Below are positions 2,487 through 51,163 of a stretch of 64,000 nt of DNA, piece by piece. Within the stretch, counting starts at the first letter, position 1. Each line of letters starts with the position of its first letter. The position numbers were made by a program, and so were the translations under genes. The DNA lies in IMG/VR virus record IMGVR_UViG_3300022744_000020, positions 62,001 through 126,000 of that record; one strand, 5' to 3'. The notes below the pieces were generated by a model, which was not told the DNA's origin, did not search any database, and saw nothing but the letters and a program-made list of their open reading frames with translations.

Positions 2487-2837
2487 ATGACCTGGAACTT
2501 CTTCTCCCTCCTCCTTCGCGCTCTTCATTCGCTGTCGGATTTGATTTGGATGGCCCTGATGTACTTGAGTGACTACGACGCGATCGTGAACGACTATCAC
2601 AATCGCGTCGACCGTCTACACGATCTGATCTGCCACCGGCGGGTAGGTCGCAAGGCCAACGCCCTTCCCGGCTGGTCCGTCCAGAAGGAACTCGAAGAAC
2701 TTGACAGCATCCGTGAGGACCTTCTGCGTGATGCTGCGAAGCTGTATTCGGGACGAGAGGATATGGAGTCGTTTGTGAAGTCTTACGACCTCATGCTGGA
2801 GGCTGTTCGAACCCACCTCACTTGGAGTGCCAAGTGA
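2487..2837 (+). CDS. hypothetical protein with a hydrophobic N-terminus
   Basis: AAAGGA RBS then ATG 2487; lies between a promoter motif and a terminator. Confidence 0.7.
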   Translation: MTWNFFSLLLRALHSLSDLIWMALMYLSDYDAIVNDYHNRVDRLHDLICHRRVGRKANALPGWSVQKELEELDSIREDLLRDAAKLYSGREDMESFVKSYDLMLEAVRTHLTWSAK

Positions 2838-2860
2838 ATCGAGTGACTCGTTGGTGAGAG

Positions 2861-2891
2861 AGAAAAGGGGCTCGTCTCCCCTTTTCTTTTT
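2861..2891 (+). terminator. Rho-independent terminator
   Basis: agaaaagggg-loop-ccccttttct followed by a T run. Confidence 0.7.
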
Positions 2892-2927
2892 ACTAACTAA
2901 AATCCACATTCCAATTATTTTCAGTCA

Positions 2928-2942
2928 CATATAACCAATGTG
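2928..2942 (+). promoter_or_regulatory. early promoter motif
   Basis: CATATAAC-caatg-TG; near-identical to 59425-59439. Confidence 0.7.
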
Positions 2943-3006
2943 AATCGAGTACAAATCGTGTATTCGAGCAACATTTCCCAAACCACTCCTGAGAAAAGGA
3001 TTTGAA

Positions 3007-3111
3007 ATGAAGTCTCTCCTCGTCCACCTCTTCGTCGATCAGTGGGAAAAATGGGTCGGCGCAGTGACCGTCGGCGTCTTCTTCGCTGTTCTCATCGCTC
3101 AAGGAGCTTAA
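3007..3111 (+). CDS. 34-aa hydrophobic micropeptide 1
   Basis: AAGGA RBS; MKSLLVHLFVDQWEKWVGAVTVGVFFAVLIAQGA*. Confidence 0.75.
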   Translation: MKSLLVHLFVDQWEKWVGAVTVGVFFAVLIAQGA

Positions 3112-3113
3112 AA

Positions 3114-3215
3114 ATGAAAGCATTCGACATCACTGTTCAAGCAGCTTGGGTCGTGATTGGCCTGAGTATCGCCGCCAAAGGCGTGCAGATGATCCTGACC
3201 ACTGGCAACAAGTAA
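3114..3215 (+). CDS. 33-aa hydrophobic micropeptide 2
   Basis: AAGGAG RBS; MKAFDITVQAAWVVIGLSIAAKGVQMILTTGNK*. Confidence 0.75.
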   Translation: MKAFDITVQAAWVVIGLSIAAKGVQMILTTGNK

Positions 3216-3225
3216 GGAGCCAAAG

Positions 3226-3324
3226 ATGTTTCGTATTCTCATTGGATGCTTTCTCGTCGCCGTCGGCGCTGGCATCGCTCGTGACGCCCTTGAAGAGATC
3301 GGAGAGCTGATGGAAGACAACTGA
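3226..3324 (+). CDS. 32-aa hydrophobic micropeptide 3
   Basis: TAAGGAG RBS; MFRILIGCFLVAVGAGIARDALEEIGELMEDN*. Confidence 0.75.
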   Translation: MFRILIGCFLVAVGAGIARDALEEIGELMEDN

Positions 3325-3386
3325 CACCCATCTTCCTCTCTTCAACACCCTTCTCTCTTTTCCTACCACACTCCCGGAGCAACACC

Positions 3387-3689
3387 ATGACCCAAGCTGA
3401 AACCAACGCCCAAGCCACCAACGAAACCAACAACGGCACCCCTCCCTTCAACGAAGAACAAGCAAACGCTGCCTATGAGGAAGCCACGCGCAAGACGCGC
3501 GAAGCCGAGGAGAAGGCTGCCGCTGAAGAGGCGGCACGCATCCGCAAGAACCTCCTGATCGCAGCCGGCAGCTTCGCTGCTGGTGCTGCCTCGGCCGTGG
3601 GCGTCGCCTACGCCTGCTGGAAGTTCTTCGGAAGCAAGAGCGGTGACGCTCCTGCCACTGCTGCTCCGACCGACGTCCCGTCGGCTTGA
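3387..3689 (+). CDS. small protein with a charged helix and a C-terminal membrane segment
   Basis: GGAG RBS; EEAARIRK then LLIAAGSFAAGAASAVGVAYACW; biased codons. Confidence 0.8.
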   Translation: MTQAETNAQATNETNNGTPPFNEEQANAAYEEATRKTREAEEKAAAEEAARIRKNLLIAAGSFAAGAASAVGVAYACWKFFGSKSGDAPATAAPTDVPSA

Positions 3690-9353: not shown

Positions 9354-9812
9354 ATGAAGAAAGATCAAGAAGTCCTCATCGCCCCGTTTCGCGCCGCCGT
9401 CAAGGACGCTGTCAAGCACAGTCCGGAAACCGGATTCGAAGTGGCACCGGGCACTTACGACAAGGCACTGGAAGCAGTCGGCCTGACGGTCGAAGCTGCC
9501 GGCAAGCTGCAGGCAGCCAACGTGCTGTTCGGCGCCGCCATCGGTGAGGAGTTCGGCGTGAAGGGCGCGCAGTTCCTGAAGGACAACCCCGACGCCAAGA
9601 TGGTCGTGCTGAAGGCGAACATGGCCAACGGTCAGGCCGTCGACTGGATCATGGAACGCAGCCGTCATCGCCCCGCGACCGGCGCCGTCCCGGAAGTCAC
9701 GACCGTGGGCTACACGACTGTGAGCTTCACCAACACTGCCGGCGAAGCCGAAGGTGTGCTGAAGGCTGTCCGCAAGGCCATCATGGCCAATGCCGCCTCG
9801 CAACTGGGCTGA
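9354..9812 (+). CDS. small Ala/Lys-rich protein, possibly DNA-binding
   Basis: Very biased codons; RSRHRPATG segment resembles the HU/IHF arm (RNPxTG); terminator at about 9838-9870. Confidence 0.7.
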   Translation: MKKDQEVLIAPFRAAVKDAVKHSPETGFEVAPGTYDKALEAVGLTVEAAGKLQAANVLFGAAIGEEFGVKGAQFLKDNPDAKMVVLKANMANGQAVDWIMERSRHRPATGAVPEVTTVGYTTVSFTNTAGEAEGVLKAVRKAIMANAASQLG

Positions 9813-9943
9813 CCGAGTTCTGCTCTTTCGAGGGCAGAGAAAGGGACCATCTGGTCCCTTTCTTTTTTATTCGTTCAAATTAAAAACATACATTACAAAT
9901 TGGAGTACCTCCTCATTTCCTGAAACAAAACCGGAATACGAAT

Positions 9944-10366
9944 ATGTCCATCCCTGCAAGAAACATTCCTGGCAACTTCATGCGTCGCTTTGCCGAAGGC
10001 AAGCTGACCGTCGGGGGTCAAGAGATCAAGACCATTGCAGATCTCGGTCAGCTTCTCAACCGTGGAATCATTACCCCGAATCAATGTCTGAATTATTCGG
10101 TTCAGTATTTTAAATACCTCAACGGCTTGGTGCCGGGCATGTCTGAAGATCAGCTCAGATTGACTCGCATGACTGTTGTGAAGATGTTGAAATTTCTTCG
10201 CCTTTACCTGGGCTCGTCGCACCTGTCGCTGTTTGTCGATTTGCAGCCAAGATCACTTCACGTTCAGCACTGGAGAAACTTCTTCATGTCGCTTGGCGAG
10301 CACGACCAGTACGACCCGTACGAGCTGTGGAAGTTGATCGTGAAGAACAGTCACCATGATCACTAA
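9944..10366 (+). CDS. hypothetical protein
   Basis: 140 aa ORF behind TACATTAC at 9889. Confidence 0.7.
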   Translation: MSIPARNIPGNFMRRFAEGKLTVGGQEIKTIADLGQLLNRGIITPNQCLNYSVQYFKYLNGLVPGMSEDQLRLTRMTVVKMLKFLRLYLGSSHLSLFVDLQPRSLHVQHWRNFFMSLGEHDQYDPYELWKLIVKNSHHDH

Positions 10367-30841: not shown

Positions 30842-31675
30842 TTAACGATAGCCACCGATTGCCACCTTCATCAGGCGTCGATAGGATTCACGATCATTCA
30901 TCTTGGCTACTGCGCGCCAGACATCACTGAGGTAAGTCTGATAGTTCTCTTCGGCATCGGAGTAAGATTCCAGAACAGACAAGAACCGACCAATCTCTGC
31001 ACCGCCTTGGAGCTTTGCAGTGTCCACCGTCACGATGAGTGTGTTGTAGAGATAGGACTTTGCTGCCAATACACACAGTTTGCGAAAAGGCAGAATCGTT
31101 CTGGTTTGAAGGTTGTTGAGATTTTCGTCGTTGGCCAGAACAACTCGAATCGAGGACGTGGCCGGGATGGAGGCTCCTTCTCGGACCATGATGACGTTCT
31201 CACCCACCAGGCGACATTCGGCATTACTTGGTGTCACGACGTTGTCAATGGCCTGCATCATCCCGGCTGACGAAGTCATGATGGATCCATGATCCTGGAG
31301 GTTTCCAAGCTGACCATAATTGAGCTGAGCACCATACCCCCAAGCACCGAATCGATTTCTTGACACGTACACCAAACACAGAGGCGTGATGATCGATCGA
31401 TTTTGGGTAACTGACTTTGGGACCCGAAAGACCGTTTCCCCCGGATCTGAGGGGAGTCTTTGCATTTGGGAGACTGGGATCTCCACTTCGGTTCCACCAA
31501 CAATGTCCAGGTCAACCAGGATTCTCGGGACGATCAATTGAGTTCGAATCTGTTCATCCAAATTCGTCCCCAAACCAAAACGGAAGTCTCGGCTCTGATC
31601 CAGGAAACCAGCGTTGAGGATCGGCAAAGGAATGCTGTTTCTGATTGTGGCGATGGCGTTCGCAATGGCGTACAT
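30842..31675 (-). CDS. conserved virion structural protein (phiKZ gp42-like)
   Basis: 277 aa; IPLPIL..GF and LVDLDIVGG blocks; position divergent from the pre-polymerase cluster. Confidence 0.6.
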   Translation of the reverse strand: MYAIANAIATIRNSIPLPILNAGFLDQSRDFRFGLGTNLDEQIRTQLIVPRILVDLDIVGGTEVEIPVSQMQRLPSDPGETVFRVPKSVTQNRSIITPLCLVYVSRNRFGAWGYGAQLNYGQLGNLQDHGSIMTSSAGMMQAIDNVVTPSNAECRLVGENVIMVREGASIPATSSIRVVLANDENLNNLQTRTILPFRKLCVLAAKSYLYNTLIVTVDTAKLQGGAEIGRFLSVLESYSDAEENYQTYLSDVWRAVAKMNDRESYRRLMKVAIGGYR

Positions 31676-31714
31676 AGGGCAATCCCCTTTAAGTTTGAAA
31701 TACGAACCACGGTG

Positions 31715-31771
31715 TGGCTATTTATAAACCTACATTATCGATAGGTAGTCGGGTTGATTTATAAATAGCCA
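31715..31771. repeat. 14-bp perfect inverted repeat enclosing a promoter motif
   Basis: tggctatttataaa (31715-31728) and tttataaatagcca (31758-31771); TACATTAT at 31731. Confidence 0.85.
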
Positions 31772-31872
31772 AGTCATTATTTGCTTAGATGACCACTAGA
31801 GAACCTAGGAACCTCCTTCGATCTAGCATCAACTGGCCCTATTACAGGGCCTCAACTAATGGATGTCAGCCC

Positions 31873-32238
31873 ATGAACACCACCCCTATCAATCTCACAG
31901 AAGTCAAGCGGCAAGCCCTTGATTTTCTTATGACGCACGCGCATTTGATCCCTCCGGGTCGCCCGTTTTACTACTGCGTGACACTGTTGGAAAATCATCC
32001 GAGTAATCCGCGATTCGCTCTGGCTGTCTATGCCGAAGCGACAAGCGGGGAAATCGAACTGCTGAGACCGCTTCCTCGGATTGATTGGTTTTATCGCAAC
32101 CAACTCTGGATCGAACACGCCCCCTACGGGGATCCTGGACCCAACGGACAGTCAGTGATCTTTTCGATGGACATCTTACCGGAGTACGCTATCACGGCAG
32201 CTTTGGAAAAAACACCCAAATTGGTGCTGAACAACTAA
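31873..32238 (+). CDS. hypothetical protein
   Basis: ATG 31873 after GGA; ORF-track start is 31789. Confidence 0.65.
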   Translation: MNTTPINLTEVKRQALDFLMTHAHLIPPGRPFYYCVTLLENHPSNPRFALAVYAEATSGEIELLRPLPRIDWFYRNQLWIEHAPYGDPGPNGQSVIFSMDILPEYAITAALEKTPKLVLNN

Positions 32239-32311
32239 AAAACTACAAGATTTACCCATTGAGTGTAGTAAGGGACTTCTTTGATCTTCGTACTGTTTCA
32301 CCACCTCCATC

Positions 32312-33091
32312 ATGCAACAACTTGAATCCTTCTCCTTCAACGCCGGCGGCATCTTCTCCAAAATTCCTCCGGCGTTGAAGGCGGAGTTAATCGATTTGCC
32401 AGCGGGGTACTATTCGCTGAGAAACCACGAAGCTCGTTTCGTAGAGGGAAAAATTTATCGAGTCATGCTTGGTAACGCGGATCCGATGCGCGTGGTTTTG
32501 GAAGGCGATGTCGTCAAGATGCAAAGGTCTGATGGTTGCATTGCGACCACGCAGCGCCGGGTGTTTTGGGAACTGCTGATGAAGACACCCACGCATTTGA
32601 GAGTTCTGACCGACGATGAAGCGAACCAAATGCGCGTCTCCGGGACAGGACAATATTTCTCTCAAGAGCAAGTTAATTTTGTCTGCGTGAGAAGAATGCT
32701 TCGCTGTTTTTTGATTGAGCAATGTCTTACCCTGAGAGAGACGCATCAGCACAATCAAAAATACAGTATGTCATTCATGACCCATCTGAAAAAGGCTTAT
32801 GAGTTGTCAGGCATAGATCCAACCACCGGGCTGTTTCCGGCGGCTCGACAACTCAAAGACTGGGACTTAAAACATCAACACCAGGTGGATGTGATGTTAG
32901 ACCCTATTTGGTTGGCTGTCAGAGAGTTAATGGATCCCGTCCTGGAATGGGTGTACAAGCTGACCAAGAATTACCTTAACCACGTTCATCAGATCGACTT
33001 GGCTGGGAACATGTTCGTTCTTCGTCGTGGTCCTGATCATCGTGCATTGCTTTGGGAGATGAGCAAAATGATTTCAAGCGTTGAGGAATAA
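32312..33091 (+). CDS. hypothetical protein
   Basis: 259 aa; first gene of the tightly coupled cluster. Confidence 0.7.
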   Translation: MQQLESFSFNAGGIFSKIPPALKAELIDLPAGYYSLRNHEARFVEGKIYRVMLGNADPMRVVLEGDVVKMQRSDGCIATTQRRVFWELLMKTPTHLRVLTDDEANQMRVSGTGQYFSQEQVNFVCVRRMLRCFLIEQCLTLRETHQHNQKYSMSFMTHLKKAYELSGIDPTTGLFPAARQLKDWDLKHQHQVDVMLDPIWLAVRELMDPVLEWVYKLTKNYLNHVHQIDLAGNMFVLRRGPDHRALLWEMSKMISSVEE

Positions 33092-33454
33092 ATGAAGATT
33101 TACATCGATGTTCGACACTTGTCCGGGGAGTTGTATAGCACGCTCCTTGGCGGCGTCAACAACAGCCAGGACGACTCCTTGGCTAAAGAGATCAGCCTCA
33201 GACTGACTGATCTCTTGAGAATGATCTACGGAGGTAATCTGGATTACTCGCTAATTCGGAGTTACCTCAGGGAGGTCAATTTGATGATCTACGGACACCC
33301 GTGTTCGGAGATCCACATTGCTGATCAGTCTGATCGCATTCTCACCAGCATCACCTCCTACATCGGGGAAACTCTTCTGTGCGTGGGGGTACGTGAAACC
33401 CCACACCTGAAGTTCATATCCCTGGAACATGGAACTGCAACTTTTGAGCAATGA
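33092..33454 (+). CDS. hypothetical protein (pre-polymerase array 1)
   Basis: GAGG RBS; abuts the upstream stop. Confidence 0.7.
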   Translation: MKIYIDVRHLSGELYSTLLGGVNNSQDDSLAKEISLRLTDLLRMIYGGNLDYSLIRSYLREVNLMIYGHPCSEIHIADQSDRILTSITSYIGETLLCVGVRETPHLKFISLEHGTATFEQ

Positions 33455-33759
33455 TTTACGTCCCTGACTGCAATAGTCTTGTTCAAGCCCTACGGATTCA
33501 CCTACCTGGTGAATCCGTAGACACTTTGATGTCAATCGTGGAGTGCCTACTGATCGAATGGTTTGTCACCGACATGGACCTGGTGATGGAGTCCCAACAA
33601 CACCTGGAATCTTGGTTCAACCCAGGGATCTTATTTATTCTCAGACACCATCTTCAAGAGCAGACTTTGGCAGCCTTGGATGAAAAAACTAAACAGATAA
33701 GAATACCGTGGTACCAAATACAACCACACCAAAACACATTCGCCATCCAGTTCAATTGA
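33451..33759 (+). CDS. hypothetical protein (array 2)
   Basis: ATGA overlap with the upstream gene. Confidence 0.7.
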   Translation: MIYVPDCNSLVQALRIHLPGESVDTLMSIVECLLIEWFVTDMDLVMESQQHLESWFNPGILFILRHHLQEQTLAALDEKTKQIRIPWYQIQPHQNTFAIQFN

Positions 33760-33771
33760 AGACGCAACTAA

Positions 33772-34194
33772 ATGTCTAGATTCTTACTCTCAATCGGAGA
33801 CTATCGACATTACTCGTTGATGTTGGAGCAGCAATTTCCCTGGGTTATGGATCGGCTAATAGGAAAGCTAGATGTGGTCGAGTGCTGTATGATTGAAGCA
33901 TACACACTCACGCCGAACGAAATTGAAGACTCGACGATTTGGGACTGTGTTGTTAACATTGTTGACACGGTGTCTAACTTTGCCGGAAATGGTAGGTGCG
34001 ATGAGTTGGATTTGTGCTCATTCAGCGGCACGAGTTGGTCTTTTTCTGTGTGTCTATACAACATCGTCTGTCACTATTTAGGGATCTTCCGTTCGGCGCT
34101 ACCAAACATGGCACATTCCGGGGGTTGCGTTGTCGATCATCACTTAACCCACATCGAGGTAGGTCAGCGTGAAAGCTCAACTCGTCCTTATTAG
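33772..34194 (+). CDS. hypothetical protein (array 3)
   Basis: 140 aa, tightly packed. Confidence 0.65.
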   Translation: MSRFLLSIGDYRHYSLMLEQQFPWVMDRLIGKLDVVECCMIEAYTLTPNEIEDSTIWDCVVNIVDTVSNFAGNGRCDELDLCSFSGTSWSFSVCLYNIVCHYLGIFRSALPNMAHSGGCVVDHHLTHIEVGQRESSTRPY

Positions 34195-34555
34195 TTTGAG
34201 AGGATTGGATAAATTCAAGCGACAGAGTCCGGATTGGAAATTCTGGATACAGCATCTCCTGGACTGGCTCTGGGAGGATCCTACGCTAACGCATCTCGAC
34301 CTGATAGACGCATTCGTTTCCAATACCACTGACTTCGGGTTTGAATCCACCACCTACCAAGAAATCAGCGCGTACTACCGTCATTGCTTGAAAGACATAG
34401 TTGATGAATTAAAGGATCGCATGGCCCAGGAGATAGACTCCGCCGTCCTCATGACTCATCCGTTCGCCAAACACACTCAGTTGGTGCTCAGTGAAATTGA
34501 GTTAAGCAACGCCATTGGTGTAAGAATTCATGCCTACAAAGACGAACTTCCGTAG
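34169..34555 (+). CDS. hypothetical protein (array 4)
   Basis: GAGG then GTG; overlaps the upstream gene. Confidence 0.65.
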   Translation: MKAQLVLISLRGLDKFKRQSPDWKFWIQHLLDWLWEDPTLTHLDLIDAFVSNTTDFGFESTTYQEISAYYRHCLKDIVDELKDRMAQEIDSAVLMTHPFAKHTQLVLSEIELSNAIGVRIHAYKDELP

Positions 34556-34973
34556 TCTTCCGACCCTTATCTTCACGAAGCCGCCAATCCAGGCTCTGGT
34601 TAAAGGTTTCTTAGACCCCTTGGGTTACGATTACGATGAAAAAGGATTCGAGGAGATGTGCTCAGAGATGATGTCCATCCTCTTCCATTCCGATGATTCA
34701 AAACTGGTTGATTTTGAGATTGCTGGATATTTCAGACTGGTATGGGCGCAGGTCTTGCCAGAGATGTCCTTGGAAGATACCCAGACTGCGCTGAGATACT
34801 TCCGCCGTCAGATTTTAGTAGAGTTTCAATCGACTCGGGAACTCATTAAGGCATACCTCAAGGGTCGTGAAATAACCACCTTGGTGTCCTTGTACCCGAC
34901 CGACCACCGAATTCGTCATTTTTATGTTATTGAGAAAGAAGCCTTCCATGCACACGCAAAAGAACCCGGCTAA
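34530..34973 (+). CDS. hypothetical protein (array 5)
   Basis: 147 aa; overlaps both neighbours. Confidence 0.65.
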   Translation: MPTKTNFRSLPTLIFTKPPIQALVKGFLDPLGYDYDEKGFEEMCSEMMSILFHSDDSKLVDFEIAGYFRLVWAQVLPEMSLEDTQTALRYFRRQILVEFQSTRELIKAYLKGREITTLVSLYPTDHRIRHFYVIEKEAFHAHAKEPG

Positions 34974-35364
34974 GGCCCGGTACTCTGTGGATCTGTCGAG
35001 AGAACTAGGTCACTTCAGATCCGCTAAACGGGTTTGTTTAGAGCCCCCGGACCGGGTGAAAGAACTCACCGATTTGGCCGTCAATCAATCTTTAGAGGCC
35101 ATTGTGCTTGATCACAATGGTTTCTCAATACCTGCACTTTCTCTAATTCAGAAGTTTGATCCCTTTTGGGTGGAGTCCCATCCTGTCAGAGCTGCAAAGT
35201 TAAGAGACCTTAGCCTGACGTTCATTGTGTTGAAGTCGGACATTTTTGGTCAGCTTAAACTTTTGCGGATGAAAACAAATCAACCTTTCAAGCTCGGTAA
35301 GATCGCAGTGAAAAATCTTACTGAGAAAAACATCTTAACCTTCGAGGTGAAAGAAAATGAGTAG
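34948..35364 (+). CDS. hypothetical protein (array 6)
   Basis: ATG 34948 (alternative start 34924); overlaps both neighbours. Confidence 0.65.
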   Translation: MHTQKNPAKARYSVDLSRELGHFRSAKRVCLEPPDRVKELTDLAVNQSLEAIVLDHNGFSIPALSLIQKFDPFWVESHPVRAAKLRDLSLTFIVLKSDIFGQLKLLRMKTNQPFKLGKIAVKNLTEKNILTFEVKENE

Positions 35365-35758
35365 TTTCGGCGCTAATTTGAAAGTAGGAAGCGTTTACGA
35401 CTTTCGCTTCCTGACCCCTAACCAGATGGGGTCCGGATATGACTCGGCCTTGGTGATCGGGATCATCGATCACCGAGAAGCTCAGCGCCTGGCTGACGTG
35501 GATGCCATCCATCGCAATCTTCGCGTAGGGAATCCGACACTCACCACGACCATCAACGGTCTGGAGTTTGTTCGCATTCTCACCAGCGCCAACGAAAAGC
35601 GGGTGTTCGCCAAGGACTGGCTGAAGACTGAACCCAAACTGGTACAGAAGAAGACCGTCCAGTTTGTGATCCCGAATGTGGAACACGCCGACATCACCGC
35701 GATCAAAGAAGCGCTCATCAGTTTGGGCTTTACCAGCTTCGAGTCGACGATTTTGTAA
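35357..35758 (+). CDS. conserved phiKZ gp49-like protein
   Basis: GAGGTG RBS; VGSVYDF...MG block; directly upstream of the DNA polymerase. Confidence 0.6.
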   Translation: MSSFGANLKVGSVYDFRFLTPNQMGSGYDSALVIGIIDHREAQRLADVDAIHRNLRVGNPTLTTTINGLEFVRILTSANEKRVFAKDWLKTEPKLVQKKTVQFVIPNVEHADITAIKEALISLGFTSFESTIL

Positions 35759-35890
35759 TTATATGCGAAAAGCTTTATTTTTTGTCGAAAATTGAGTATG
35801 ATCTCAGTCAGAGGTTTCTCCCTTTCTTGGCCGACTGATTGAGCTTGGACCAAACCGGCAAAGAGTTTAGCGCTAATCGCATATGTAATG

Positions 35891-35930
35891 GGGGCACGGG
35901 GCGAAAGCTCCGTGCCTCTTATTCTTTTTT
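35891..35930 (+). terminator. Rho-independent terminator
   Basis: ggggcacggggc-gaaa-gctccgtgcctc followed by ttattctttttt. Confidence 0.7.
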
Positions 35931-35973
35931 GTGTCATTGCCTGATCGTCTGATAACCTCCAGCCAAACCACCC

Positions 35974-38190
35974 ATGAAAAACGTATTCTTCAAGTCAGCA
36001 AATCAGTACAAGCGAGATGTGAATCCGGTGGAGCACTGCCTTCAATCTCGGGCGGAAATGTTGAGCATTCAGACAGGAGATCCGGTAGAGAAGTGTTTGG
36101 AGTTTGTGAGAAGATCTCACTCAAAGACGGGGATTTACGGTAATCGCATCAAAGACCCGGTGGTCAATTATTTCCATCGTCCGAACGGGGAAGATCGGGA
36201 AAAGAAAACGACCACTCTGATGAACTACATCGGGGACTCTATTAAGCGTAAAGAGTTCATCGCCCCCACTCTGACGACGTACGTGAATCAGGAAGAAGAA
36301 CAAAGCGTCTTCTCTGACGACATTTTTAACAACAAGAAAAATCGAAGCAAAGCCAAAAAGAAAGAGTTTGACTTTCGAACGGCTGGTGACGCGATTAATC
36401 AGGCCATCCAATATTTGGCACAGACCGGCTTTAAGAGAAACAATAACGCACTGTCCGGTGCACGGCTGAGTCCGTCCACTCCTTTATTTAATCCGACCTG
36501 TCACTCGACACTAACGAGCATTTGTCGGATTACCAGCGGTTACGGTAACCTGAACAATGAGAAGTTCATTTCCGGTAATCGTCACTATTACCGGCTGGAC
36601 ATTGTGCTGAACAACATCGTCAGCATCGTGACTCATTCGGACTTGGAGTTAATTCAAAGGGTCATTGAACGGCACGGCCTGGAGTATCCCACTTTGGACC
36701 AGGTCTGCGATTTGATCAACCGCTCGCTTCGACTGTACATGATCGACCAGAAGGTCGAAGCCACTATCCGTGAATTCGTGAGTCATCTCACCCCACTTCA
36801 GCGGGCTGCTTTCACTTACGTCGGGGACCTCTACCACCTCCGAGTGGTCAACCCCGATTTCATGCGTAGGTTTTTGGATGAGATTACCATGCAGCTCGAA
36901 GGGACCCATCCGGATCCCATGACGACAGTAAAGTCGGCACCTGGAGAGTATTTGTTTTTTGCACATCAGATCTGCAACAACTATACACGTGGCATCGGCA
37001 TGAAGCATGAAAAGATTGCCGACGGCCCTGGCATTCATTCGCTGGCTTTGACGATTGAAAATATCGCACGTGTTTGCGAACACTACTCCGATTTGATCGA
37101 AGCGTTTTACATGACGAGCAATCTGCCGTCAACTGTGGCGGATCTTCCGCATTCGATGCGTCGGGTGGTCACGACCAGTGACACTGACTCTACGATTTTC
37201 ACGGTGATGGAATGGGTCGATTGGTATGCTGGCACGCACAAACGCTGTCAGAAAACCATCACCTGTACGGCTGCAATTGTTTTTCTGACGGCTTCTTCGA
37301 TTGTGCATATCCTGGCCACAATGTCGGCTAACCTGGGAGCCATTGAGAAGTACATCTTTGAAATCAAGATGAAGTCGGAGTTTGAATTCGATCCGTTCAT
37401 TCCTACGAATTTGGGCAAACATTACTTCGCTAACAAATGGTGCCAAGAAGGCCAAGTGTTTGCGCAAGCCGACCGGGAAGAGAAGGGGGTGTATCTAATC
37501 AACAGCGCTCTACCCGAAGAGTTGATGGCGAAAGCAAAAGCCATGCGCTGCAAGATCATGGACGCAATCAACAACGGGGAGAAAATCCGACTGATGGATT
37601 ATCTCAATGAAGTCGCTGAGGTAGAGAACAACATCGTGGCTTCAATCCAAAAAGGCGAGCCGACCTATTTGAGTGCTGGGACGGTTCGAGATCCAGCAAG
37701 TTACACCAAAGACAAGGAAAACTCTCCTTACCAGAACCACGTGTTTTGGAATTTTGTCTTTGGAGAGAAGTACGGAATTGTCCCAGAGCCGCCATACCAG
37801 ACGCTGAAGATTTCCCTGACGACAGACACTCGGTCCCGAATGATGGATTGGCTGAAGACCATGAAGGATCGAGGTATTGCGACTCGTTTGGTTGAGTGGA
37901 TGAAGCGAAAGGAAAAGACTGAGATTTCCACGATCTATTTGCCCAACATCTACTTGTCGTCCACTGGAGTGCCTGAAGAGCTCCTGGAGGTGATTGACTA
38001 CGAGAAGATGCTCGGACAGCTCTGTGGGCCTTTCTACCTGGCTCTAGAGACCATCGGCTACTACGGAAACGGTGAAAGAATCAAACGACTGGCTTTCAGT
38101 TCGTACAACTTGAAAGCACAGATTCCGAAGATTGATGAAATTGATCTAGAGATGGCTCAAGAGGCTTTCTCCGACCTGCAAGGAGAGTAG
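35974..38190 (+). CDS. family-B DNA polymerase, polymerase-domain subunit (phiKZ gp50-like)
   Basis: Motif B-like KRNNNALSG, motif C SDTDS, KHY; no exonuclease motifs recognised. Confidence 0.88.
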   Translation: MKNVFFKSANQYKRDVNPVEHCLQSRAEMLSIQTGDPVEKCLEFVRRSHSKTGIYGNRIKDPVVNYFHRPNGEDREKKTTTLMNYIGDSIKRKEFIAPTLTTYVNQEEEQSVFSDDIFNNKKNRSKAKKKEFDFRTAGDAINQAIQYLAQTGFKRNNNALSGARLSPSTPLFNPTCHSTLTSICRITSGYGNLNNEKFISGNRHYYRLDIVLNNIVSIVTHSDLELIQRVIERHGLEYPTLDQVCDLINRSLRLYMIDQKVEATIREFVSHLTPLQRAAFTYVGDLYHLRVVNPDFMRRFLDEITMQLEGTHPDPMTTVKSAPGEYLFFAHQICNNYTRGIGMKHEKIADGPGIHSLALTIENIARVCEHYSDLIEAFYMTSNLPSTVADLPHSMRRVVTTSDTDSTIFTVMEWVDWYAGTHKRCQKTITCTAAIVFLTASSIVHILATMSANLGAIEKYIFEIKMKSEFEFDPFIPTNLGKHYFANKWCQEGQVFAQADREEKGVYLINSALPEELMAKAKAMRCKIMDAINNGEKIRLMDYLNEVAEVENNIVASIQKGEPTYLSAGTVRDPASYTKDKENSPYQNHVFWNFVFGEKYGIVPEPPYQTLKISLTTDTRSRMMDWLKTMKDRGIATRLVEWMKRKEKTEISTIYLPNIYLSSTGVPEELLEVIDYEKMLGQLCGPFYLALETIGYYGNGERIKRLAFSSYNLKAQIPKIDEIDLEMAQEAFSDLQGE

Positions 38191-39632: not shown

Positions 39633-41576
39633 ATGGCTATCAATTCCCCTTCGTTCGCCGGAATCCCTGGTGTCACCGATACCGCGATCGACATGTCGGC
39701 CCCGACCCAAACGGGTGCGGCAAATCCCTTCCCGTCCAGCACGAGCGCTGGCGGCTTTCGAGCCCGCGGCGGCCTGTCCAGCCTGGCTTCGATGGGTCCC
39801 TCGATCTTCCGCAACAGCGGCGACGACGTCACCAATGCGTTCGTCACGCACATGCGTGAAGCGGTCAAGACCACCGACCGTGCTGGTTGGCAGACCCGCG
39901 TGATCCCGATCACGCGTGCTGATCAACCCGACATCGCCTGGAGCGGCATCGCCATCGCAGTGCGCGCCGGCGAACAACCGGACGTGGCCGTGTTCGTGCT
40001 GATCATCGGTGGCAGCGAAGCCGGCCCGGCACCGCGGAGCATTCCGTTCCAAGGTCAGACCTGGCAGATCAAGTACACGCCGGGAGACGCCTGGGATGCG
40101 TCGTACGTCCAAGCCGTCAGCCAACACCTGCAGCGCACGCTGAGTGCAGCCTTCGGCGGCGTGCCGCTGAACGATCCGATCCTGGTCGGCGCGATGGCGG
40201 TTCCGCAGGAAGTTTCGACGGCGGACGTGGACCGGATCAACCAGATCTTGAGCAGCGCGCAGTACGCGGCCGCCCACGCACTGGTCCCGACCGAGCTGGA
40301 AATCGAACCCGGCGATCGCCTGACGTTCGCTCCGCGGTACCGTTGCCCCGAGCTGACCAACGTGGTTGGCATGCCTGTGCTGGCTCCGATCTGTGTGGAC
40401 ACGTCCACCGGCAGCGGTCGTCAGTCCCAGGACCAGACGACGATCAACCGTCAGACGGGCAACCGTCGTCTGGGTGGTGCGGGCGCCTACCTGCAAGCCA
40501 CCTACGTCGGTCGCATCCAGCAGCCGGGCAACTACGGCTTCGCTCCCCAGGTCAACAACCGCGTGTTCGCACCGGAGTTCGTGATCACTGCGGTGGAAAG
40601 CATGGGCGCGGCAACGATGCCGCTGCTGCTGCTGAATGCCTGTGGTTTCCTGAGCGTGTCGTCGAACCTGGCGTGGATGGAAGGCTTCCGACCGGATCCG
40701 AACATCCCTCCGGGCAACGTCGACCATCGTGACGTGGGCATCCTGGGACGAGTGGCCGGCTACGAAGCCGCCAGCAATGGTGGTCGTGGTCAGCGCGCGC
40801 AACTCAAGGGCGCAGGCGTGCAAGATCAGCACATCGGCGAGTTCCTGGAACGCATCTTCCACGACCGTCCGATGATCTCGGTTCGCGTCGAAGAAGCTGG
40901 CCCGATGACCTGGGCACTGGCTCCACTGGTGGAAATCGCATGTGGTGGCCCGGCTGCGGCTGAAGCCAACTCCATGCTGATCCAGCAACTGAACCAGTTC
41001 TGCCGCGGCAAGCTGATGGCTCGTCTGGCCAACGCTGGCGACCAGAACATGCCGATCATGATCGAGAACTGCCCGCGCGTTCACCTGGGGTACTACGTGT
41101 CCTCGGACGGCGTGCGTCACGATCTGGCCAACATCGGTCTGATCGCACTGGCCAACGCCAGTGGCTCCGATGGCTCGCCGACGCTGGTCGAAGCTGACTG
41201 GGTGCGCACGTTCGATCCGCAGTCCGCTCCGGAAGAAGTGCGTCTGCAACAGCGCCTGTCGCTGATCGAGCTGGCCACCCACGGCGTCCAAGTCACGGGC
41301 TACGCACGGGTGCCGACGTTCAACGGTGCGTTCCTCAAGTGCTTCACTGAAGCACTGGTCGACGCCGGCCTGTCGATGCAAGTCGCGGGCAACCAGTCGC
41401 GCATGCGTGCCCAGGAAATGTACGCTCCGGGCTTCTACGCAGCCGCAGCCGTCGGTTCGGTGAACTTCTACACCGCAGCCGATGCCAATGGCCAACACTC
41501 GGGCGCCGGCCGTGCGTTCTTCAACACGGGCTTCAACACCGGGATCGGCCAAGGTCACCCGACCGGCTTCCACTGA
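39633..41576 (+). CDS. chmA: chimallin, phage nucleus shell protein (phiKZ gp54-like)
   Basis: 647 aa, strong codon bias, low-complexity termini, PEFVIT, RVHLGYY and VTGYAR blocks; lies between the gp52-like gene and nvRNAP beta'. Confidence 0.85.
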   Translation: MAINSPSFAGIPGVTDTAIDMSAPTQTGAANPFPSSTSAGGFRARGGLSSLASMGPSIFRNSGDDVTNAFVTHMREAVKTTDRAGWQTRVIPITRADQPDIAWSGIAIAVRAGEQPDVAVFVLIIGGSEAGPAPRSIPFQGQTWQIKYTPGDAWDASYVQAVSQHLQRTLSAAFGGVPLNDPILVGAMAVPQEVSTADVDRINQILSSAQYAAAHALVPTELEIEPGDRLTFAPRYRCPELTNVVGMPVLAPICVDTSTGSGRQSQDQTTINRQTGNRRLGGAGAYLQATYVGRIQQPGNYGFAPQVNNRVFAPEFVITAVESMGAATMPLLLLNACGFLSVSSNLAWMEGFRPDPNIPPGNVDHRDVGILGRVAGYEAASNGGRGQRAQLKGAGVQDQHIGEFLERIFHDRPMISVRVEEAGPMTWALAPLVEIACGGPAAAEANSMLIQQLNQFCRGKLMARLANAGDQNMPIMIENCPRVHLGYYVSSDGVRHDLANIGLIALANASGSDGSPTLVEADWVRTFDPQSAPEEVRLQQRLSLIELATHGVQVTGYARVPTFNGAFLKCFTEALVDAGLSMQVAGNQSRMRAQEMYAPGFYAAAAVGSVNFYTAADANGQHSGAGRAFFNTGFNTGIGQGHPTGFH

Positions 41577-49732: not shown

Positions 49733-51163
49733 ATGTACCCGAACCAAATCAAAATCGCCCGCATCATTCTGGCCCCCACCGGTACCTACCAGGATCACTT
49801 TCAAACCCCGATCGCACTGGCGTTCACCCCTCAGTCCGACAGCGTGCTGTCGGAGATGATCGGTCGAGGCACTACGACGGCTAGTCAGGTAGCCCGGCAG
49901 CTCAGCGACAGCATCGGTCTGGCCCATCTGCCGCACGCCGGAGTGAGCATCACCAATTCCTGGGCTGAGCGGCGTATGCGCTTCATCATGGAGATTCATG
50001 TCGAAGGACAACATGCCGGCACGAGCATCGAATACGTGATGGGTTGGACCTCGCACGTTGGTGTCACACCCAACGGCTTCATCGACCAGAACATGACGAT
50101 GGTGGTCAACAGTACGACCATGCTGCGCAACAGCATCAGCTTCGGCATGGATGGTCGCCGGCAAAACAACATCTTCGTGGCGGACAACTCCCACCTGCTC
50201 AGCAGCGGGATGAACGGACACGTTCCGATCGGACAACGCACGATTCGTCCTCAAGACGCGCTGGTGCTGGGCAACAACTCCCAGTTCCTGGACATGGGTG
50301 AGAACGTCATCGACGCACGTGGCCAACTCACCAACACGCCAGTCAAGACCGATCGCAGCAACGAGTCCCCGGCGCAATGGTTCGCGCAGTTCATCAACTC
50401 GTGGATGCAAGCATGTCAGTCCAATCGAAACGAGATGGACTACAGCCGAGAGGAGATGGTCGGTGCGGCCGTGGCGCAAACCGACGACAACTGGGTCGCC
50501 AACGATCCGTTCCTCGTGACGATCCGAGACCATAGTCAAACGCGAGGTAGCAGTTTCACCTGGGGAGATCTCCTCACCATCGACCCGAGTATCGTGCAGC
50601 GCGTCAGCATCATTCCGTGCAGCACTGATGTGTATCAAACCCTCAGCACGCGTGGGGGTGCGGCCAACTGGGACGACGGAACGACGGAGAACTACATCGC
50701 TCGTGTGATCGCCAACACCATTCCTGGGTTGATGCTGGCGTGTAACTACCAGTCGGTGACGTTCCAGTTCAACCACGTCGGGGAGTTCCTCTACTCCAAC
50801 CTGTCGAGTCTGACCAATCAGGACATCAAGATCAATGCTGAAAAGCTGAAGAATCGAATCCTGAGTGAGATTCTCCCGCTGATCAGCCCACAGCAGTCGG
50901 TCGGGTTTGTGGCCGTCTGCGCACTGGATGCCTACGGTGAATCTATCGTGGACGTGACCCTGGGCAATGACACGATGCGTTACGTCAGCGCCGGCTTCGC
51001 TGATGCCCTGTTCTCGACTCTGATGAGCACCAATCAGGAACACATCGTGGGCCTGGCACTCGGACTCGGACGAACCATGGACCGCGTGGCCAGCTACTAC
51101 TGCCCCTCCATGGCCAACAATCAAGCCTCCATGGGTGCCTTCTCTCCTTCGATGGAGTATTGA
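49733..51163 (+). CDS. picA: PicA/Imp1-like nuclear import factor (phiKZ gp69-like)
   Basis: 476 aa directly after the gp68-like gene; TGTY, NSW..RR.RF.M and IRPQD blocks. Confidence 0.65.
   Translation: MYPNQIKIARIILAPTGTYQDHFQTPIALAFTPQSDSVLSEMIGRGTTTASQVARQLSDSIGLAHLPHAGVSITNSWAERRMRFIMEIHVEGQHAGTSIEYVMGWTSHVGVTPNGFIDQNMTMVVNSTTMLRNSISFGMDGRRQNNIFVADNSHLLSSGMNGHVPIGQRTIRPQDALVLGNNSQFLDMGENVIDARGQLTNTPVKTDRSNESPAQWFAQFINSWMQACQSNRNEMDYSREEMVGAAVAQTDDNWVANDPFLVTIRDHSQTRGSSFTWGDLLTIDPSIVQRVSIIPCSTDVYQTLSTRGGAANWDDGTTENYIARVIANTIPGLMLACNYQSVTFQFNHVGEFLYSNLSSLTNQDIKINAEKLKNRILSEILPLISPQQSVGFVAVCALDAYGESIVDVTLGNDTMRYVSAGFADALFSTLMSTNQEHIVGLALGLGRTMDRVASYYCPSMANNQASMGAFSPSMEY

What the first reader, a model, noticed from the sequence alone, without database searches (positions are those of the whole stretch)
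33092..35364. Array of six overlapping, similarly built small proteins at the nuclear-import-factor locus
Seen: six 102-147 aa ORFs with no obvious sequence identity but the same layout. Each has a short N-terminal hydrophobic strand (IYID, IYVPD, FLLSI, LVLIS, LIFT, YSVD), a helical middle and a terminal strand-turn-strand (e.g. FISLEHGTATFE, QIQPHQNTFAIQF, NLTEKNILTFEV). They are tightly coupled, and three successive junctions overlap by 26 nt if starts 34169, 34530 and 34948 are correct. Known, from memory: the phiKZ genes just upstream of gp49-gp50 include import factors Imp2 (gp47) and Imp4 (gp48). Inference: a diverged paralog family forming a stoichiometric complex or a set of cargo adaptors for PicA-dependent import.
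Basis: partly seen in the sequence, partly recalled or inferred. Interest (0 to 1): 0.7.

Follow-up and report, generated by a model that had tools for sequence, protein, structure and literature searches.

The report
Six small genes in Imp2/Imp4 slot
Six real, tightly packed small genes of an uncultured freshwater nucleus-forming jumbo phage sit exactly where phage phiKZ keeps its nuclear-import helper genes Imp2 and Imp4; they are probably counterparts diverged beyond recognition, but their fold and function could not be shown directly.

Summary
The six ORFs are real genes. All are intact in four strain-level relatives, with dN/dS of 0.03-0.29 and conserved start codons. The three 26-nt overlaps, each a +1 frame step, are confirmed.

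The window belongs to a deep-branching chimallivirus (DNA polymerase at most 53% identical to any other). The array fills the conserved slot between the phiKZ gp43-like and gp49-like genes. This is the slot that holds gp44-gp48 in phiKZ, including Imp2 (gp47) and Imp4 (gp48).

In most other chimalliviruses the last three genes of this slot are ancient paralogs: three clean clades, mutual HH probability about 99%. Foldseek finds that fold almost only in chimallivirus proteins, including a 178-aa protein of phage SL2 that by its length is probably the Imp2 ortholog.

The link for the window's own proteins is indirect:
- Gene C has true homologs just upstream of the paralog triplet.
- B, D, E and F give only weak signals.
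- The six show no mutual similarity.
- Their structure models are poor.
- The complex prediction gave no answer.

Paralogy and an import-adaptor role therefore stay inferences.

The parts
30842..31675 (-). phiKZ gp42-like gene (277 aa, DUF7484). It is the upstream anchor of the conserved block.
   Evidence: BLASTP against FLC9 gp13 gives 5e-56 and against phiKZ gp42 8e-35. The family HMM gives E 6e-93. PF24302 is annotated on the identical gene in L085.
31873..32238 (+). Small ORF of unknown function: 121 aa from this ATG, 149 aa if read from 31789. It occupies the place where most relatives carry PhuZ.
   Evidence: Strain L088 has frameshifting indels in the first 50 nt of the 149-aa version, and gene callers aa. 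There are no homologs.
32312..33091 (+). phiKZ gp43 / FLC9 gp9 family gene (259 aa). It is the first gene of the tightly packed run.
   Evidence: Family HMM E 1.6e-16. dN/dS is 0.14 against L088.
33092..33454 (+). Gene A (120 aa), an orphan small protein.
   Evidence: Intact in L084 and L088 with dN/dS 0.29 and 0.10. GAGG lies upstream of the ATG. No family hits. The ESM Atlas model has pLDDT 0.46.
33451..33759 (+). Gene B (102 aa). It has a weak profile match to the phiKZ gp46 / PhiPA3 gp043 family.
   Evidence: dN/dS 0.03 and 0.07. hhalign against the gp46 family gives probability 58% (E 1e-4) without realignment and 12.8% with it. The HMM score is 5.1 bits, p = 0.005 against 400 shuffles.
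33772..34194 (+). Gene C (140 aa). It is a member of a small family whose gene lies immediately upstream of the paralog triplet in the nearest clade.
   Evidence: phmmer gives E 0.002 to L005 7776-8201. The HMM score is 15 bits, p <= 0.002. The family grows to six members with motifs conserved along the whole length. The AlphaFold2 model is poor (pLDDT 51.6): helices, then a hairpin.
34169..34555 (+). Gene D (128 aa, GTG start). It overlaps C by 26 nt and sits in the slot of paralog p1.
   Evidence: dN/dS 0.09 and 0.05. Smith-Waterman z is 4.8 and 5.6 against the L165 array proteins, with reversed controls at most 3.0. It does not match the p-family HMMs.
34530..34973 (+). Gene E (147 aa). It overlaps D by 26 nt and sits in the slot of paralog p2 and of phiKZ gp47 (Imp2).
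   Evidence: dN/dS 0.10-0.20. Smith-Waterman z is 5.9 against the positional counterpart in L165. Exhaustive phmmer against 1.84 billion representatives finds only its own cluster.
34948..35364 (+). Gene F (138 aa). It overlaps E by 26 nt and sits in the slot of paralog p3 and of phiKZ gp48 (Imp4).
   Evidence: dN/dS 0.09-0.19. The ATG at 34948 is the start used by gene callers. A profile of F plus the L165 counterpart against p3 gives HH probability 11% over 92 colinear columns, its best hit among 13 families.
35357..35758 (+). phiKZ gp49-like gene (133 aa, SH3DP). It is the downstream anchor and overlaps F by 8 nt.
   Evidence: phrog_3235 E 4e-14. PF20287. Family HMM E 4e-29, present in 80 of 80 loci.
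35890..35919 (+). Strong terminator-like hairpin (13-bp stem, 9 G-C pairs, T run). It lies after the gp49-like gene and before the polymerase gene.
35974..38190 (+). Divergent DNA polymerase, the phiKZ gp50 homolog.
   Evidence: tblastn finds 291 phage records, the best being 41% identity to FLC9. PF20286.
39633..41576 (+). Chimallin, the nuclear shell protein. It marks the phage as nucleus-forming.
   Evidence: PF25677 Chimallin_Phikzvirus is annotated on the identical gene of L085. Coordinates were transferred using the L085-to-window offset.
49733..51163 (+). Imp1/PicA homolog (476 aa).
   Evidence: BLASTP against phiKZ gp69 gives E 3e-22 and 21% identity over about 480 aa. tblastn finds 119 phage records.

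Best explanation
The six ORFs are genuine genes. They read in one direction with the gp43-like gene upstream and the gp49-like gene downstream, and overlapping or abutting junctions suggest translational coupling.

Together they are this phage's version of the conserved small-gene block that nucleus-forming jumbo phages (Chimalliviridae) carry between the gp43-like and gp49-like genes. In phiKZ that block is gp44-gp48 and contains the cargo-specific nuclear import factors Imp2 and Imp4.

The block evolves so fast that sequence similarity is lost between clades, while gene number, size, order, overlaps and total length are kept.

D, E and F are most likely the diverged counterparts of an ancient triplicated paralog set (p1, p2, p3) whose fold is an N-terminal strand, four helices and a C-terminal beta hairpin. 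C belongs to the family just upstream of that triplet. A and B are further members of the block.

The most likely function, by analogy with Imp2 and Imp4, is a set of small adaptor or accessory proteins. Each would help a particular cargo pass the chimallin shell through Imp1/PicA.

Shown: the genes are coding, the synteny, the paralog family and its fold in relatives, and the homology of C.

Inferred: homology of D, E and F to the triplet, the shared fold of all six, and the import function.
For: Coding and coupling:
- dN/dS is 0.03-0.29 in four strains and the starts are conserved.
- The overlaps are 26, 26 and 26 nt, each a +1 frame step, and are conserved between strains.
- The only strong terminator-like site found in 31500-36200 lies after the gp49-like gene.

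Synteny:
- The gp42-, gp43-, gp49- and gp50-like anchors are all present.
- phiKZ and PhiPA3 also have six small genes in this slot.
- The slot is 2265 nt here, against a median of 2137 nt (IQR 1987-2340) in 101 loci.

Paralog family in relatives:
- About 150 HMM hits in 69 loci, typically three per locus.
- p1, p2 and p3 form three clean clades.
- HH probabilities between them are 98.6-98.8%. F8-p3 is 69% and F7-p3 is 51%.
- The same +1,+1 frame pattern occurs in 20 of 37 loci, and coding overlaps are common.

Fold:
- The AlphaFold2 model has pLDDT 88.5 and the order strand, four helices, hairpin.
- Foldseek against BFVD returns almost only chimallivirus small proteins. These include a 178-aa SL2 protein at probability 0.98. 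SL2 encodes a 178-aa gp47 ortholog that is 98.9% identical to phiKZ Imp2.

Window-specific links:
- C is homologous to the gene just before p1 in L004, L005, L166, L054 and L008.
- D and E score z 4.8-5.9 against the array of the nearest relative L165, with reversed controls at most 3.0.
- The best profile hit of F is p3, and the alignment is colinear.
- B matches the gp46 family weakly.

Function:
- Imp2 and Imp4 are required for import of specific cargo (10.1101/2024.03.27.586873).
- No transposon insertions are tolerated in them (PMC12676376).
- An Imp1/PicA homolog and chimallin are present in the window.
Against: - D, E and F do not match the p-family HMMs, nor the HMMs built from the nearest clade alone.
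- No family of the phiKZ group matches the p family by profile above reversed-sequence background.
- No pair of the six window proteins is similar.
- The HH probability of 11% for F against p3 is only modestly above the reversed-control ceiling of about 5%.
- Single-sequence and shallow-alignment models of A, C, E and F are too poor to give a fold.
- The named PhiPA3 Imp2 homolog gp044 is only a weak Foldseek hit (probability 0.44, TM 0.34). No Imp4 homolog is identifiable among the top 50.
- That the SL2 178-aa BFVD entry is the gp47 ortholog rests on its length alone.
- The import role is known for only two genes in one phage group. The authors found them conserved only in Pseudomonas phages by sequence.
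- Complex prediction for the triplet gave no answer.
Confidence: 0.5

Rival explanations
1. The slot is a hypervariable 'cassette' region. Genes there are replaced or arise anew, so the six window genes would be unrelated orphans. Possible roles include host takeover, anti-defence or early accessory functions. Only by accident of position would they lie where Imp2 and Imp4 lie in phiKZ.
For: - A, B, D, E and F have no family-level match in 243 loci, PHROGs or Pfam, and the one exhaustive search (E) found only its own cluster.
- They show no mutual similarity.
- Each phiKZ slot protein sits in its own narrow PHROG.
- The nearest relative L165 (polymerase 53% identical) already shows no HMM-detectable similarity.
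Against: - Gene number, sizes, strand, overlaps and total slot length are conserved across 101 loci. Random replacement would not preserve these.
- C has true homologs at the same position.
- D and E score well above reversed controls against the positional counterparts in L165.
- E and F accumulate amino-acid changes about 2.3-2.5 times faster than the polymerase between close strains (dN 0.10-0.11 against 0.043). That rate is enough to erase similarity at the observed polymerase distances without any replacement.
Confidence: 0.25
2. The array encodes subunits of one hetero-oligomeric complex made in fixed proportions. It might include the gp43-like and gp49-like (SH3-type) proteins and serve DNA replication or nucleus organisation next to the polymerase gene, rather than acting as separate cargo adaptors.
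For: - The junctions overlap or abut across eight consecutive genes, which suggests translational coupling.
- The order of the three paralogs has been kept since an ancient triplication.
- The block is always adjacent to the DNA polymerase gene.
Against: - Complex prediction for p1+p2+p3 gave no answer, which is evidence neither for nor against.
- A strong terminator-like hairpin separates the block from the polymerase gene.
- In phiKZ, Imp2 and Imp4 were selected by different cargos (Nlp1 and TopA). That argues for separate rather than joint action.
Confidence: 0.15
3. Some or all of the six ORFs are not genes, only chance reading frames in a gene-dense region.
For: - There are no database homologs and the structure models are poor.
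- Ribosome-binding motifs before B, C and E are weak.
Against: - Every ORF is intact in all strains that cover it, at up to 18% nucleotide divergence. Synonymous changes far exceed non-synonymous ones and the start codons are conserved.
- Independent gene callers in several assemblies call them.
Confidence: 0.02

Closest known systems
phiKZ Imp2 (gp47, orf47) and its PhiPA3 homolog gp044
   Same: - Same genomic slot: second gene upstream of the gp49-like gene, on the same strand, in the run of small genes after gp43. Window gene E holds that position.
- Similar size: 178 and 170 aa against 147 aa.
- The fold of the family that fills this slot in other chimalliviruses matches a 178-aa SL2 protein, which by its length is probably the Imp2 ortholog (Foldseek probability 0.98, TM 0.53).
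   Different: - There is no sequence or profile similarity to any window protein.
- By tblastn, Imp2 homologs are restricted to Pseudomonas phages (59 records).
- The fold of E is unknown.
- Imp2's nuclear import and its requirement for Nlp1 import cannot be tested here.
phiKZ Imp4 (gp48, orf48) and PhiPA3 gp045
   Same: - Same position: the gene immediately upstream of the gp49-like gene. Window gene F holds that position.
- Similar size: 127 and 150 aa against 138 aa.
   Different: - No sequence or profile similarity.
- No Imp4 homolog could be identified among the Foldseek hits.
- Its role in TopA import cannot be tested here.
Triplicated paralog family upstream of the gp49-like gene in most chimalliviruses (FLC9 gp5 and gp4 type; unnamed, absent from Pfam and PHROGs)
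   Same: - Three consecutive same-strand genes of about 125-150 aa lie between a C-family or F7 gene and the gp49-like gene.
- Successive +1 frame steps and coding overlaps are common. D, E and F show the same arrangement.
- The best profile hit of F is p3, and the alignment is colinear.
   Different: - D, E and F do not reach significance against the family HMMs.
- Their mutual similarity is nil, whereas p1, p2 and p3 recognise each other at about 99% HH probability.
phiKZ gp46 / PhiPA3 gp043 family
   Same: Window gene B gives the only above-background profile match between the window array and the phiKZ-group slot families: hhalign probability 58% without realignment and 12.8% with it, and an HMM score with p = 0.005.
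   Different: - The match is weak.
- It breaks strict gene-by-gene collinearity: B is second in the array, gp46 is fourth.
- The function of gp46 is unknown.

Membership tests
Chimalliviridae (nucleus-forming jumbo phages): the genome as a whole | It encodes chimallin, an Imp1/PicA homolog and the divergent phiKZ-type DNA polymerase, in conserved synteny. | tested here: met
   PF25677 chimallin and PF20286 polymerase are annotated on the identical contig. BLASTP against phiKZ gp69 gives E 3e-22. The gp42, gp43, gp49 and gp50 anchors are present.
phiKZ Imp2 (gp47) family | Detectable sequence or profile homology to gp47 or PhiPA3 gp044. | tested here: not met
   The gp47-family HMM (30 members) gives no score above shuffles for any of A-F. 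BLASTP finds nothing.
phiKZ Imp2 (gp47) family | Position: second small gene upstream of the gp49-like gene, same strand, within the gp43-gp49 block. | tested here: met
   Gene E (34530-34973) holds this position.
phiKZ Imp2 (gp47) family | Shared three-dimensional fold. | tested here: inconclusive
   The ESM Atlas model of E has pLDDT 0.51 and there are no homologs for an alignment. Only the p-family model from relatives hits the probable Imp2 ortholog of SL2.
phiKZ Imp2 / Imp4 import adaptors | Required for nuclear import of a specific cargo. Imp2 is itself imported in an Imp1-dependent way. | not testable with these tools
   These are genetic and microscopy assays in 10.1101/2024.03.27.586873. 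The window's phage is uncultured.
phiKZ Imp4 (gp48) family | Detectable sequence or profile homology to gp48 or PhiPA3 gp045. | tested here: not met
   The family HMM (29 members) finds nothing above shuffles. The hhalign comparison with F gives probability 0.8%.
Triplicated p1/p2/p3 family (FLC9 gp5 and gp4 type) | Match to the family HMM or profile. | tested here: not met
   Scores of D, E and F against p1, p2, p3 and the nearest-clade sub-HMMs are -2.2 to 2.6 bits, with p >= 0.03 uncorrected. The only weak signal is F plus L165 against p3, at HH probability 11%.
Triplicated p1/p2/p3 family (FLC9 gp5 and gp4 type) | Three tandem same-strand genes of about 125-150 aa directly upstream of the gp49-like gene, preceded by the C-family or F7 gene, often overlapping with +1 frame steps. 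| tested here: met
   C is a true C-family member. D, E and F are 128, 147 and 138 aa, against 127, 152 and 126 aa in L005. The +1,+1 frame pattern matches 20 of 37 loci.
Triplicated p1/p2/p3 family (FLC9 gp5 and gp4 type) | Fold: N-terminal strand, four helices, C-terminal beta hairpin. | tested here: inconclusive
   The family model is confident (pLDDT 88.5). There is no usable model of D, E or F.
C family (gene upstream of p1 in L004, L005, L166, L054, L008) | Sequence homology along the whole length and the same position. | tested here: met
   phmmer E 0.002. The HMM score is 15 bits, p <= 0.002. The six-member alignment has conserved motifs.
phiKZ gp46 / PhiPA3 gp043 family (for gene B) | Profile homology. 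| tested here: inconclusive
   hhalign gives probability 58% without realignment and 12.8% with it. The HMM score is 5.1 bits, p = 0.005.

The most novel reading that the evidence does not exclude
The whole gp43-gp49 block of Chimalliviridae would be one ancient, serially duplicated family of small proteins with a strand, four-helix, hairpin fold. It would include phiKZ Imp2 and Imp4, the p1/p2/p3 triplet with its F7 and F8 neighbours, and the six window genes. Every nucleus-forming phage would then carry five or six of these as a diversifying set of cargo-specific adaptors for Imp1/PicA. On this reading Imp2 and Imp4 are not Pseudomonas-phage inventions but members of a family-wide import toolkit. 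Its rapid divergence would track cargo and host.
Probability: 0.3. Interest if true: 0.75.

Novelty: new member of a known kind. Interest (0 to 1): 0.5.

Why it matters
[quoted passage not shown] Only Imp1/PicA, Imp3 and Imp6 are regarded as broadly conserved. Imp2, Imp4 and Imp5 are treated as specialities of Pseudomonas phages.

If the small-gene block at this locus is one fast-evolving fold family present in essentially all chimalliviruses, two things follow. Cargo-specific adaptors become a general feature of the system. Each phage also offers five or six candidate adaptors that can be tested directly with the existing EcoRI-fusion selections.

The window adds a deep-branching freshwater lineage in which the block keeps its architecture although every sequence has drifted beyond recognition. 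The result also shows that position, gene size and fold, rather than sequence, are what can be used to annotate these genes.

Tried and rejected
- PHROGs and Pfam scans of A-F gave nothing above threshold.
- Megablast of the locus against phage genomes found no match.
- A single-protein scan of IMG/VR with the polymerase found nothing. Alignment-based scans found loci, but none with polymerase identity above 53%.
- Iterative HMM searches from A-F over up to 12,230 ORFs of 243 loci returned self-hits only, except for C.
- A word-indexed search of 5.8 billion proteins with the gp49-like gene, and exhaustive phmmer of E against 1.84 billion representatives, found only the protein's own cluster.
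- ESM Atlas look-alikes for A, E and F rested on poor models and gave no credible leads. The LRR-like feature hits for F at 0.85-0.90 are within the stated chance range.
- AlphaFold2 of C with its 6 homologous rows reached pLDDT 51.6, and its BFVD search gave only noise.
- Complex prediction for p1+p2+p3 of L005 gave 'no answer'. It is not counted as evidence either way.
- Smith-Waterman z-scans of A-F against 111 p-family members were rejected as evidence, because reversed sequences gave similar tails.
- Profile comparison of the phiKZ-group families with the p family gave nothing above reversed controls.
- A simple hydrophobic-run test of the 'layout' did not discriminate for the window proteins.
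- No solved structure exists for Imp2, Imp4 or the p family.
- Laying contigs from RNA-labelled wastewater libraries cannot show transcription.
- I did not fold D, E or F with the p-family alignment as a surrogate MSA, because that would be circular.
Full report
**Context.** The window is bases 62001-126000 of a single 270,383-bp contig, the same as metagenome contig Ga0228700_1000008. It belongs to a nucleus-forming jumbo phage.
- It encodes a phiKZ-type divergent DNA polymerase at 35974-38190. tblastn finds 291 phage records, the best at 41% identity to Burkholderia phage FLC9.
- It encodes chimallin (PF25677, on the identical contig L085).
- It encodes an Imp1/PicA homolog at 49733-51163 (BLASTP against phiKZ gp69, E 3e-22).
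- No close relative exists in IMG/VR, JGI metagenomes or GenBank phages. The nearest distinct polymerase is 53% identical (L165) and the next are 45-46%.
- Only strain-level variants (82-97% nt identity) occur, in freshwater and wastewater samples.

**Observation check.**
- Four strain-level contigs cover parts of the array. Every ORF is intact in every strain that covers it. Start and stop codons are conserved and dN/dS is 0.03-0.29. These are real protein-coding genes.
- The junctions are exactly as described: A/B share ATGA, and C/D, D/E and E/F each overlap by 26 nt with a +1 frame step. F starts at the ATG at 34948, as gene callers choose. F overlaps the next gene by 8 nt.
- The overlaps are conserved between strains.
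- The only strong terminator-like hairpin in 31500-36200 lies at 35890-35919, after the gp49-like gene. The gp43-like gene, A-F and the gp49-like gene therefore look like one unit.
- No pair of the six proteins is similar (z at most 1.8).
- The claimed common layout could not be verified on the proteins themselves. ESM Atlas models are poor. AlphaFold2 of C is poor. A crude pattern count is not discriminating.

**Synteny.** The flanks are unambiguous homologs of phiKZ genes.
- 30842-31675 (minus strand) is gp42-like (E 6e-93).
- 32312-33091 is gp43-like (E 1.6e-16).
- 35357-35758 is gp49-like (E 4e-29, PF20287).
- gp50, the polymerase, follows.
- In phiKZ the slot between gp43 and gp49 holds gp44, gp44.1, gp45, gp46, gp47 and gp48. 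In PhiPA3 it holds gp040-gp045. That is six small genes in each.
- gp47 is Imp2 and gp48 is Imp4 (10.1101/2024.03.27.586873). Neither tolerates transposon insertions (PMC12676376).
- Across 101 loci that have both anchors, the slot length is tightly distributed: median 2137 nt, IQR 1987-2340. The window's 2265 nt falls inside that range.

**What fills the slot elsewhere.** I fetched about 240 chimallivirus loci around the polymerase gene.
- In FLC9-type, RSL2-type and many uncultured lineages the order is: gp42-like (minus strand), often PhuZ, F10, gp43-like, F8, F7, three genes of one family, gp49-like, polymerase.
- The three genes (p1, p2, p3) are paralogs. Their mutual HH probabilities are 98.6-98.8%.
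- In a tree of 111 sequences from 37 loci, the three positions form three nearly pure clades. The triplication is therefore ancient and its order is fixed.
- F8 and F7 match p3 at 69% and 51% HH probability, so they are probably older copies.
- Coding overlaps and the +1,+1 frame pattern are common in the triplet: 20 of 37 loci.
- Another clade has its own adjacent paralog pair.
- Neither Pfam nor PHROGs contains this family. Each phiKZ slot protein sits alone in a narrow PHROG.

**Fold.** AlphaFold2 of L005 p3 with 105 family sequences is confident (pLDDT 88.5, pTM 0.82).
- The order of elements is strand 7-11, helices 13-22, 30-45, 47-63 and 70-93, then short strands and a hairpin at 111-117 and 120-125.
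- Foldseek against BFVD returns almost exclusively small proteins of chimalliviruses: RP12 (several), Noxifer, Desertfox, Ea35-70, Goslar, Eowyn, EL and Psa21.
- Among the hits is a 178-aa protein of phage SL2 (probability 0.98, TM 0.53). PhiPA3 gp044, the Imp2 homolog, scores probability 0.44. PhiPA3 gp039, of the gp43 family, scores probability 0.66.
- SL2 encodes a 178-aa gp47 ortholog that is 98.9% identical to phiKZ Imp2. The identification of the BFVD entry rests on that length.
- The top hit, 180 aa in RP12, has the length of ORF008 inside the RP12 block.
- No solved or characterised structural relative was found.

**Links for the window's own proteins.**
- C is a true homolog of the gene that directly precedes p1 in the nearest clade (L004, L005, L166, L054, L008). 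phmmer gives E 0.002 and the HMM gives 15 bits with p <= 0.002. Motifs are conserved along the whole length.
- This fixes the register: D, E and F occupy the p1, p2 and p3 positions. Their sizes are close: 128, 147 and 138 aa, against 127, 152 and 126 aa in L005.
- Against the three array ORFs of the nearest relative L165, forward Smith-Waterman z-scores average 1.8. The values are D-102 4.8, E-185 5.9, F-141 2.7 and D-185 5.6. Reversed controls average 0 and reach at most 3.0.
- A profile of F plus its L165 counterpart finds p3 as its best hit among 13 families. The HH probability is 11% over 92 colinear columns. That is only modestly above the roughly 5% reached by reversed controls.
- B matches the phiKZ gp46 / PhiPA3 gp043 family weakly.
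- D, E and F do not reach significance against the p-family HMMs.
- E has no homolog outside its own cluster among 1.84 billion representatives.
- E and F change at the protein level about 2.3-2.5 times faster than the polymerase between strains (dN 0.11 and 0.10 against 0.043). That explains the loss of similarity at 45-53% polymerase identity.

**Mechanism.**
- Shown: eight consecutive same-strand genes with overlapping or abutting junctions and a terminator at the end. All are under purifying selection over short timescales and diverge fast over long ones.
- Inferred (most likely): they are co-expressed small proteins with the block's common fold. By analogy with Imp2 (needed for Nlp1 import and itself imported through Imp1) and Imp4 (needed for TopA import), they would act as cargo-specific adaptors or accessory factors of the Imp1/PicA pathway. 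Divergence would be driven by cargo and host.
- The alternative that they assemble into one complex could not be tested. The complex prediction for p1+p2+p3 returned 'no answer'.

**Comparison and novelty.**
- The locus is the positional counterpart of the Imp2/Imp4 region. It fails the sequence-homology test for Imp2, Imp4 and the p family, so I do not file A-F as members of those families. I file the array as a new, extremely diverged instance of the conserved chimallivirus gp43-gp49 small-gene block.
- I did not find the broader point in the searched literature: the block is a fold family with an ancient triplication, and the probable Imp2 ortholog shares the fold. The import paper states that Imp2 and Imp4 are conserved only in Pseudomonas phages by sequence.

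**Verdict.**
The locus identity and the paralog-family idea hold at the level of the block.
- Paralogy, fold and function of the six window proteins remain inferences.
- Interest is moderate.

Noticed in passing
whole genome G000; window 31700-32300: The PhuZ family HMM finds no match anywhere in the 270-kb genome (E < 0.1). In 41 of 56 related loci PhuZ lies between the gp42-like and gp43-like genes. Here a 121-149 aa orphan ORF sits there instead, and its 5' part carries frameshifting indels in strain L088.
   Followed up: partly
L001 (Burkholderia phage FLC9) 9769-10299 against the annotated gp6 at 9811-10176 on the opposite strand: The annotated reverse-strand gp6 overlaps a plus-strand ORF that matches the p-family HMM (E 2e-22). 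This ORF is the first of three paralogs. gp6 is probably a misannotation.
   Followed up: partly
L005 8534-8992 and L004 7766-8203: The middle paralog (p2) has no ATG in L005 and none before residue 58 in L004. Both open with the same residues (LFYL) from a TTG that overlaps the end of p1 by 38-44 nt. This could be an unusual start codon or some other form of coupled translation.
   Followed up: no
L110, L112, L115, L120 (phiKZ-group contigs, about 55% polymerase identity to phiKZ), about 2800-3650: A separate clade carries two adjacent paralogs of another small family in the same region upstream of the polymerase gene. Tandem duplication in this block seems to be recurrent.
   Followed up: no
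window 34183-35346 (D, E, F): In three of four public runs laid on the locus, contigs at 85% likeness or more cover the flanks but drop out over part or all of D-F. One DNA run has a contig that skips 211 nt inside E (34636 to 34848). This may reflect strain-level hypervariability or a deletion variant, or simply assembly gaps.
   Followed up: no
window 34915-34947: The 33 nt upstream of F's ATG are identical in the most divergent strain (L086, 82% overall identity). They include the alternative ATG at 34924 and a purine-rich stretch. The 26-nt E/F overlap carries only 2 changes.
   Followed up: partly
PhiPA3 gp039 (gp43 family), BFVD entry F8SJS1: The larger gp43-family protein also appears among the Foldseek matches of the p3 model (probability 0.66, TM 0.45). 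The gp43-like gene that opens the block may contain the same fold.
   Followed up: no
L245 (Ralstonia phage RP12) 6192-8009: RP12 carries a 605-aa gene inserted inside the block, between the small genes and the gp49-like gene. The slot does tolerate insertions in some lineages.
   Followed up: no
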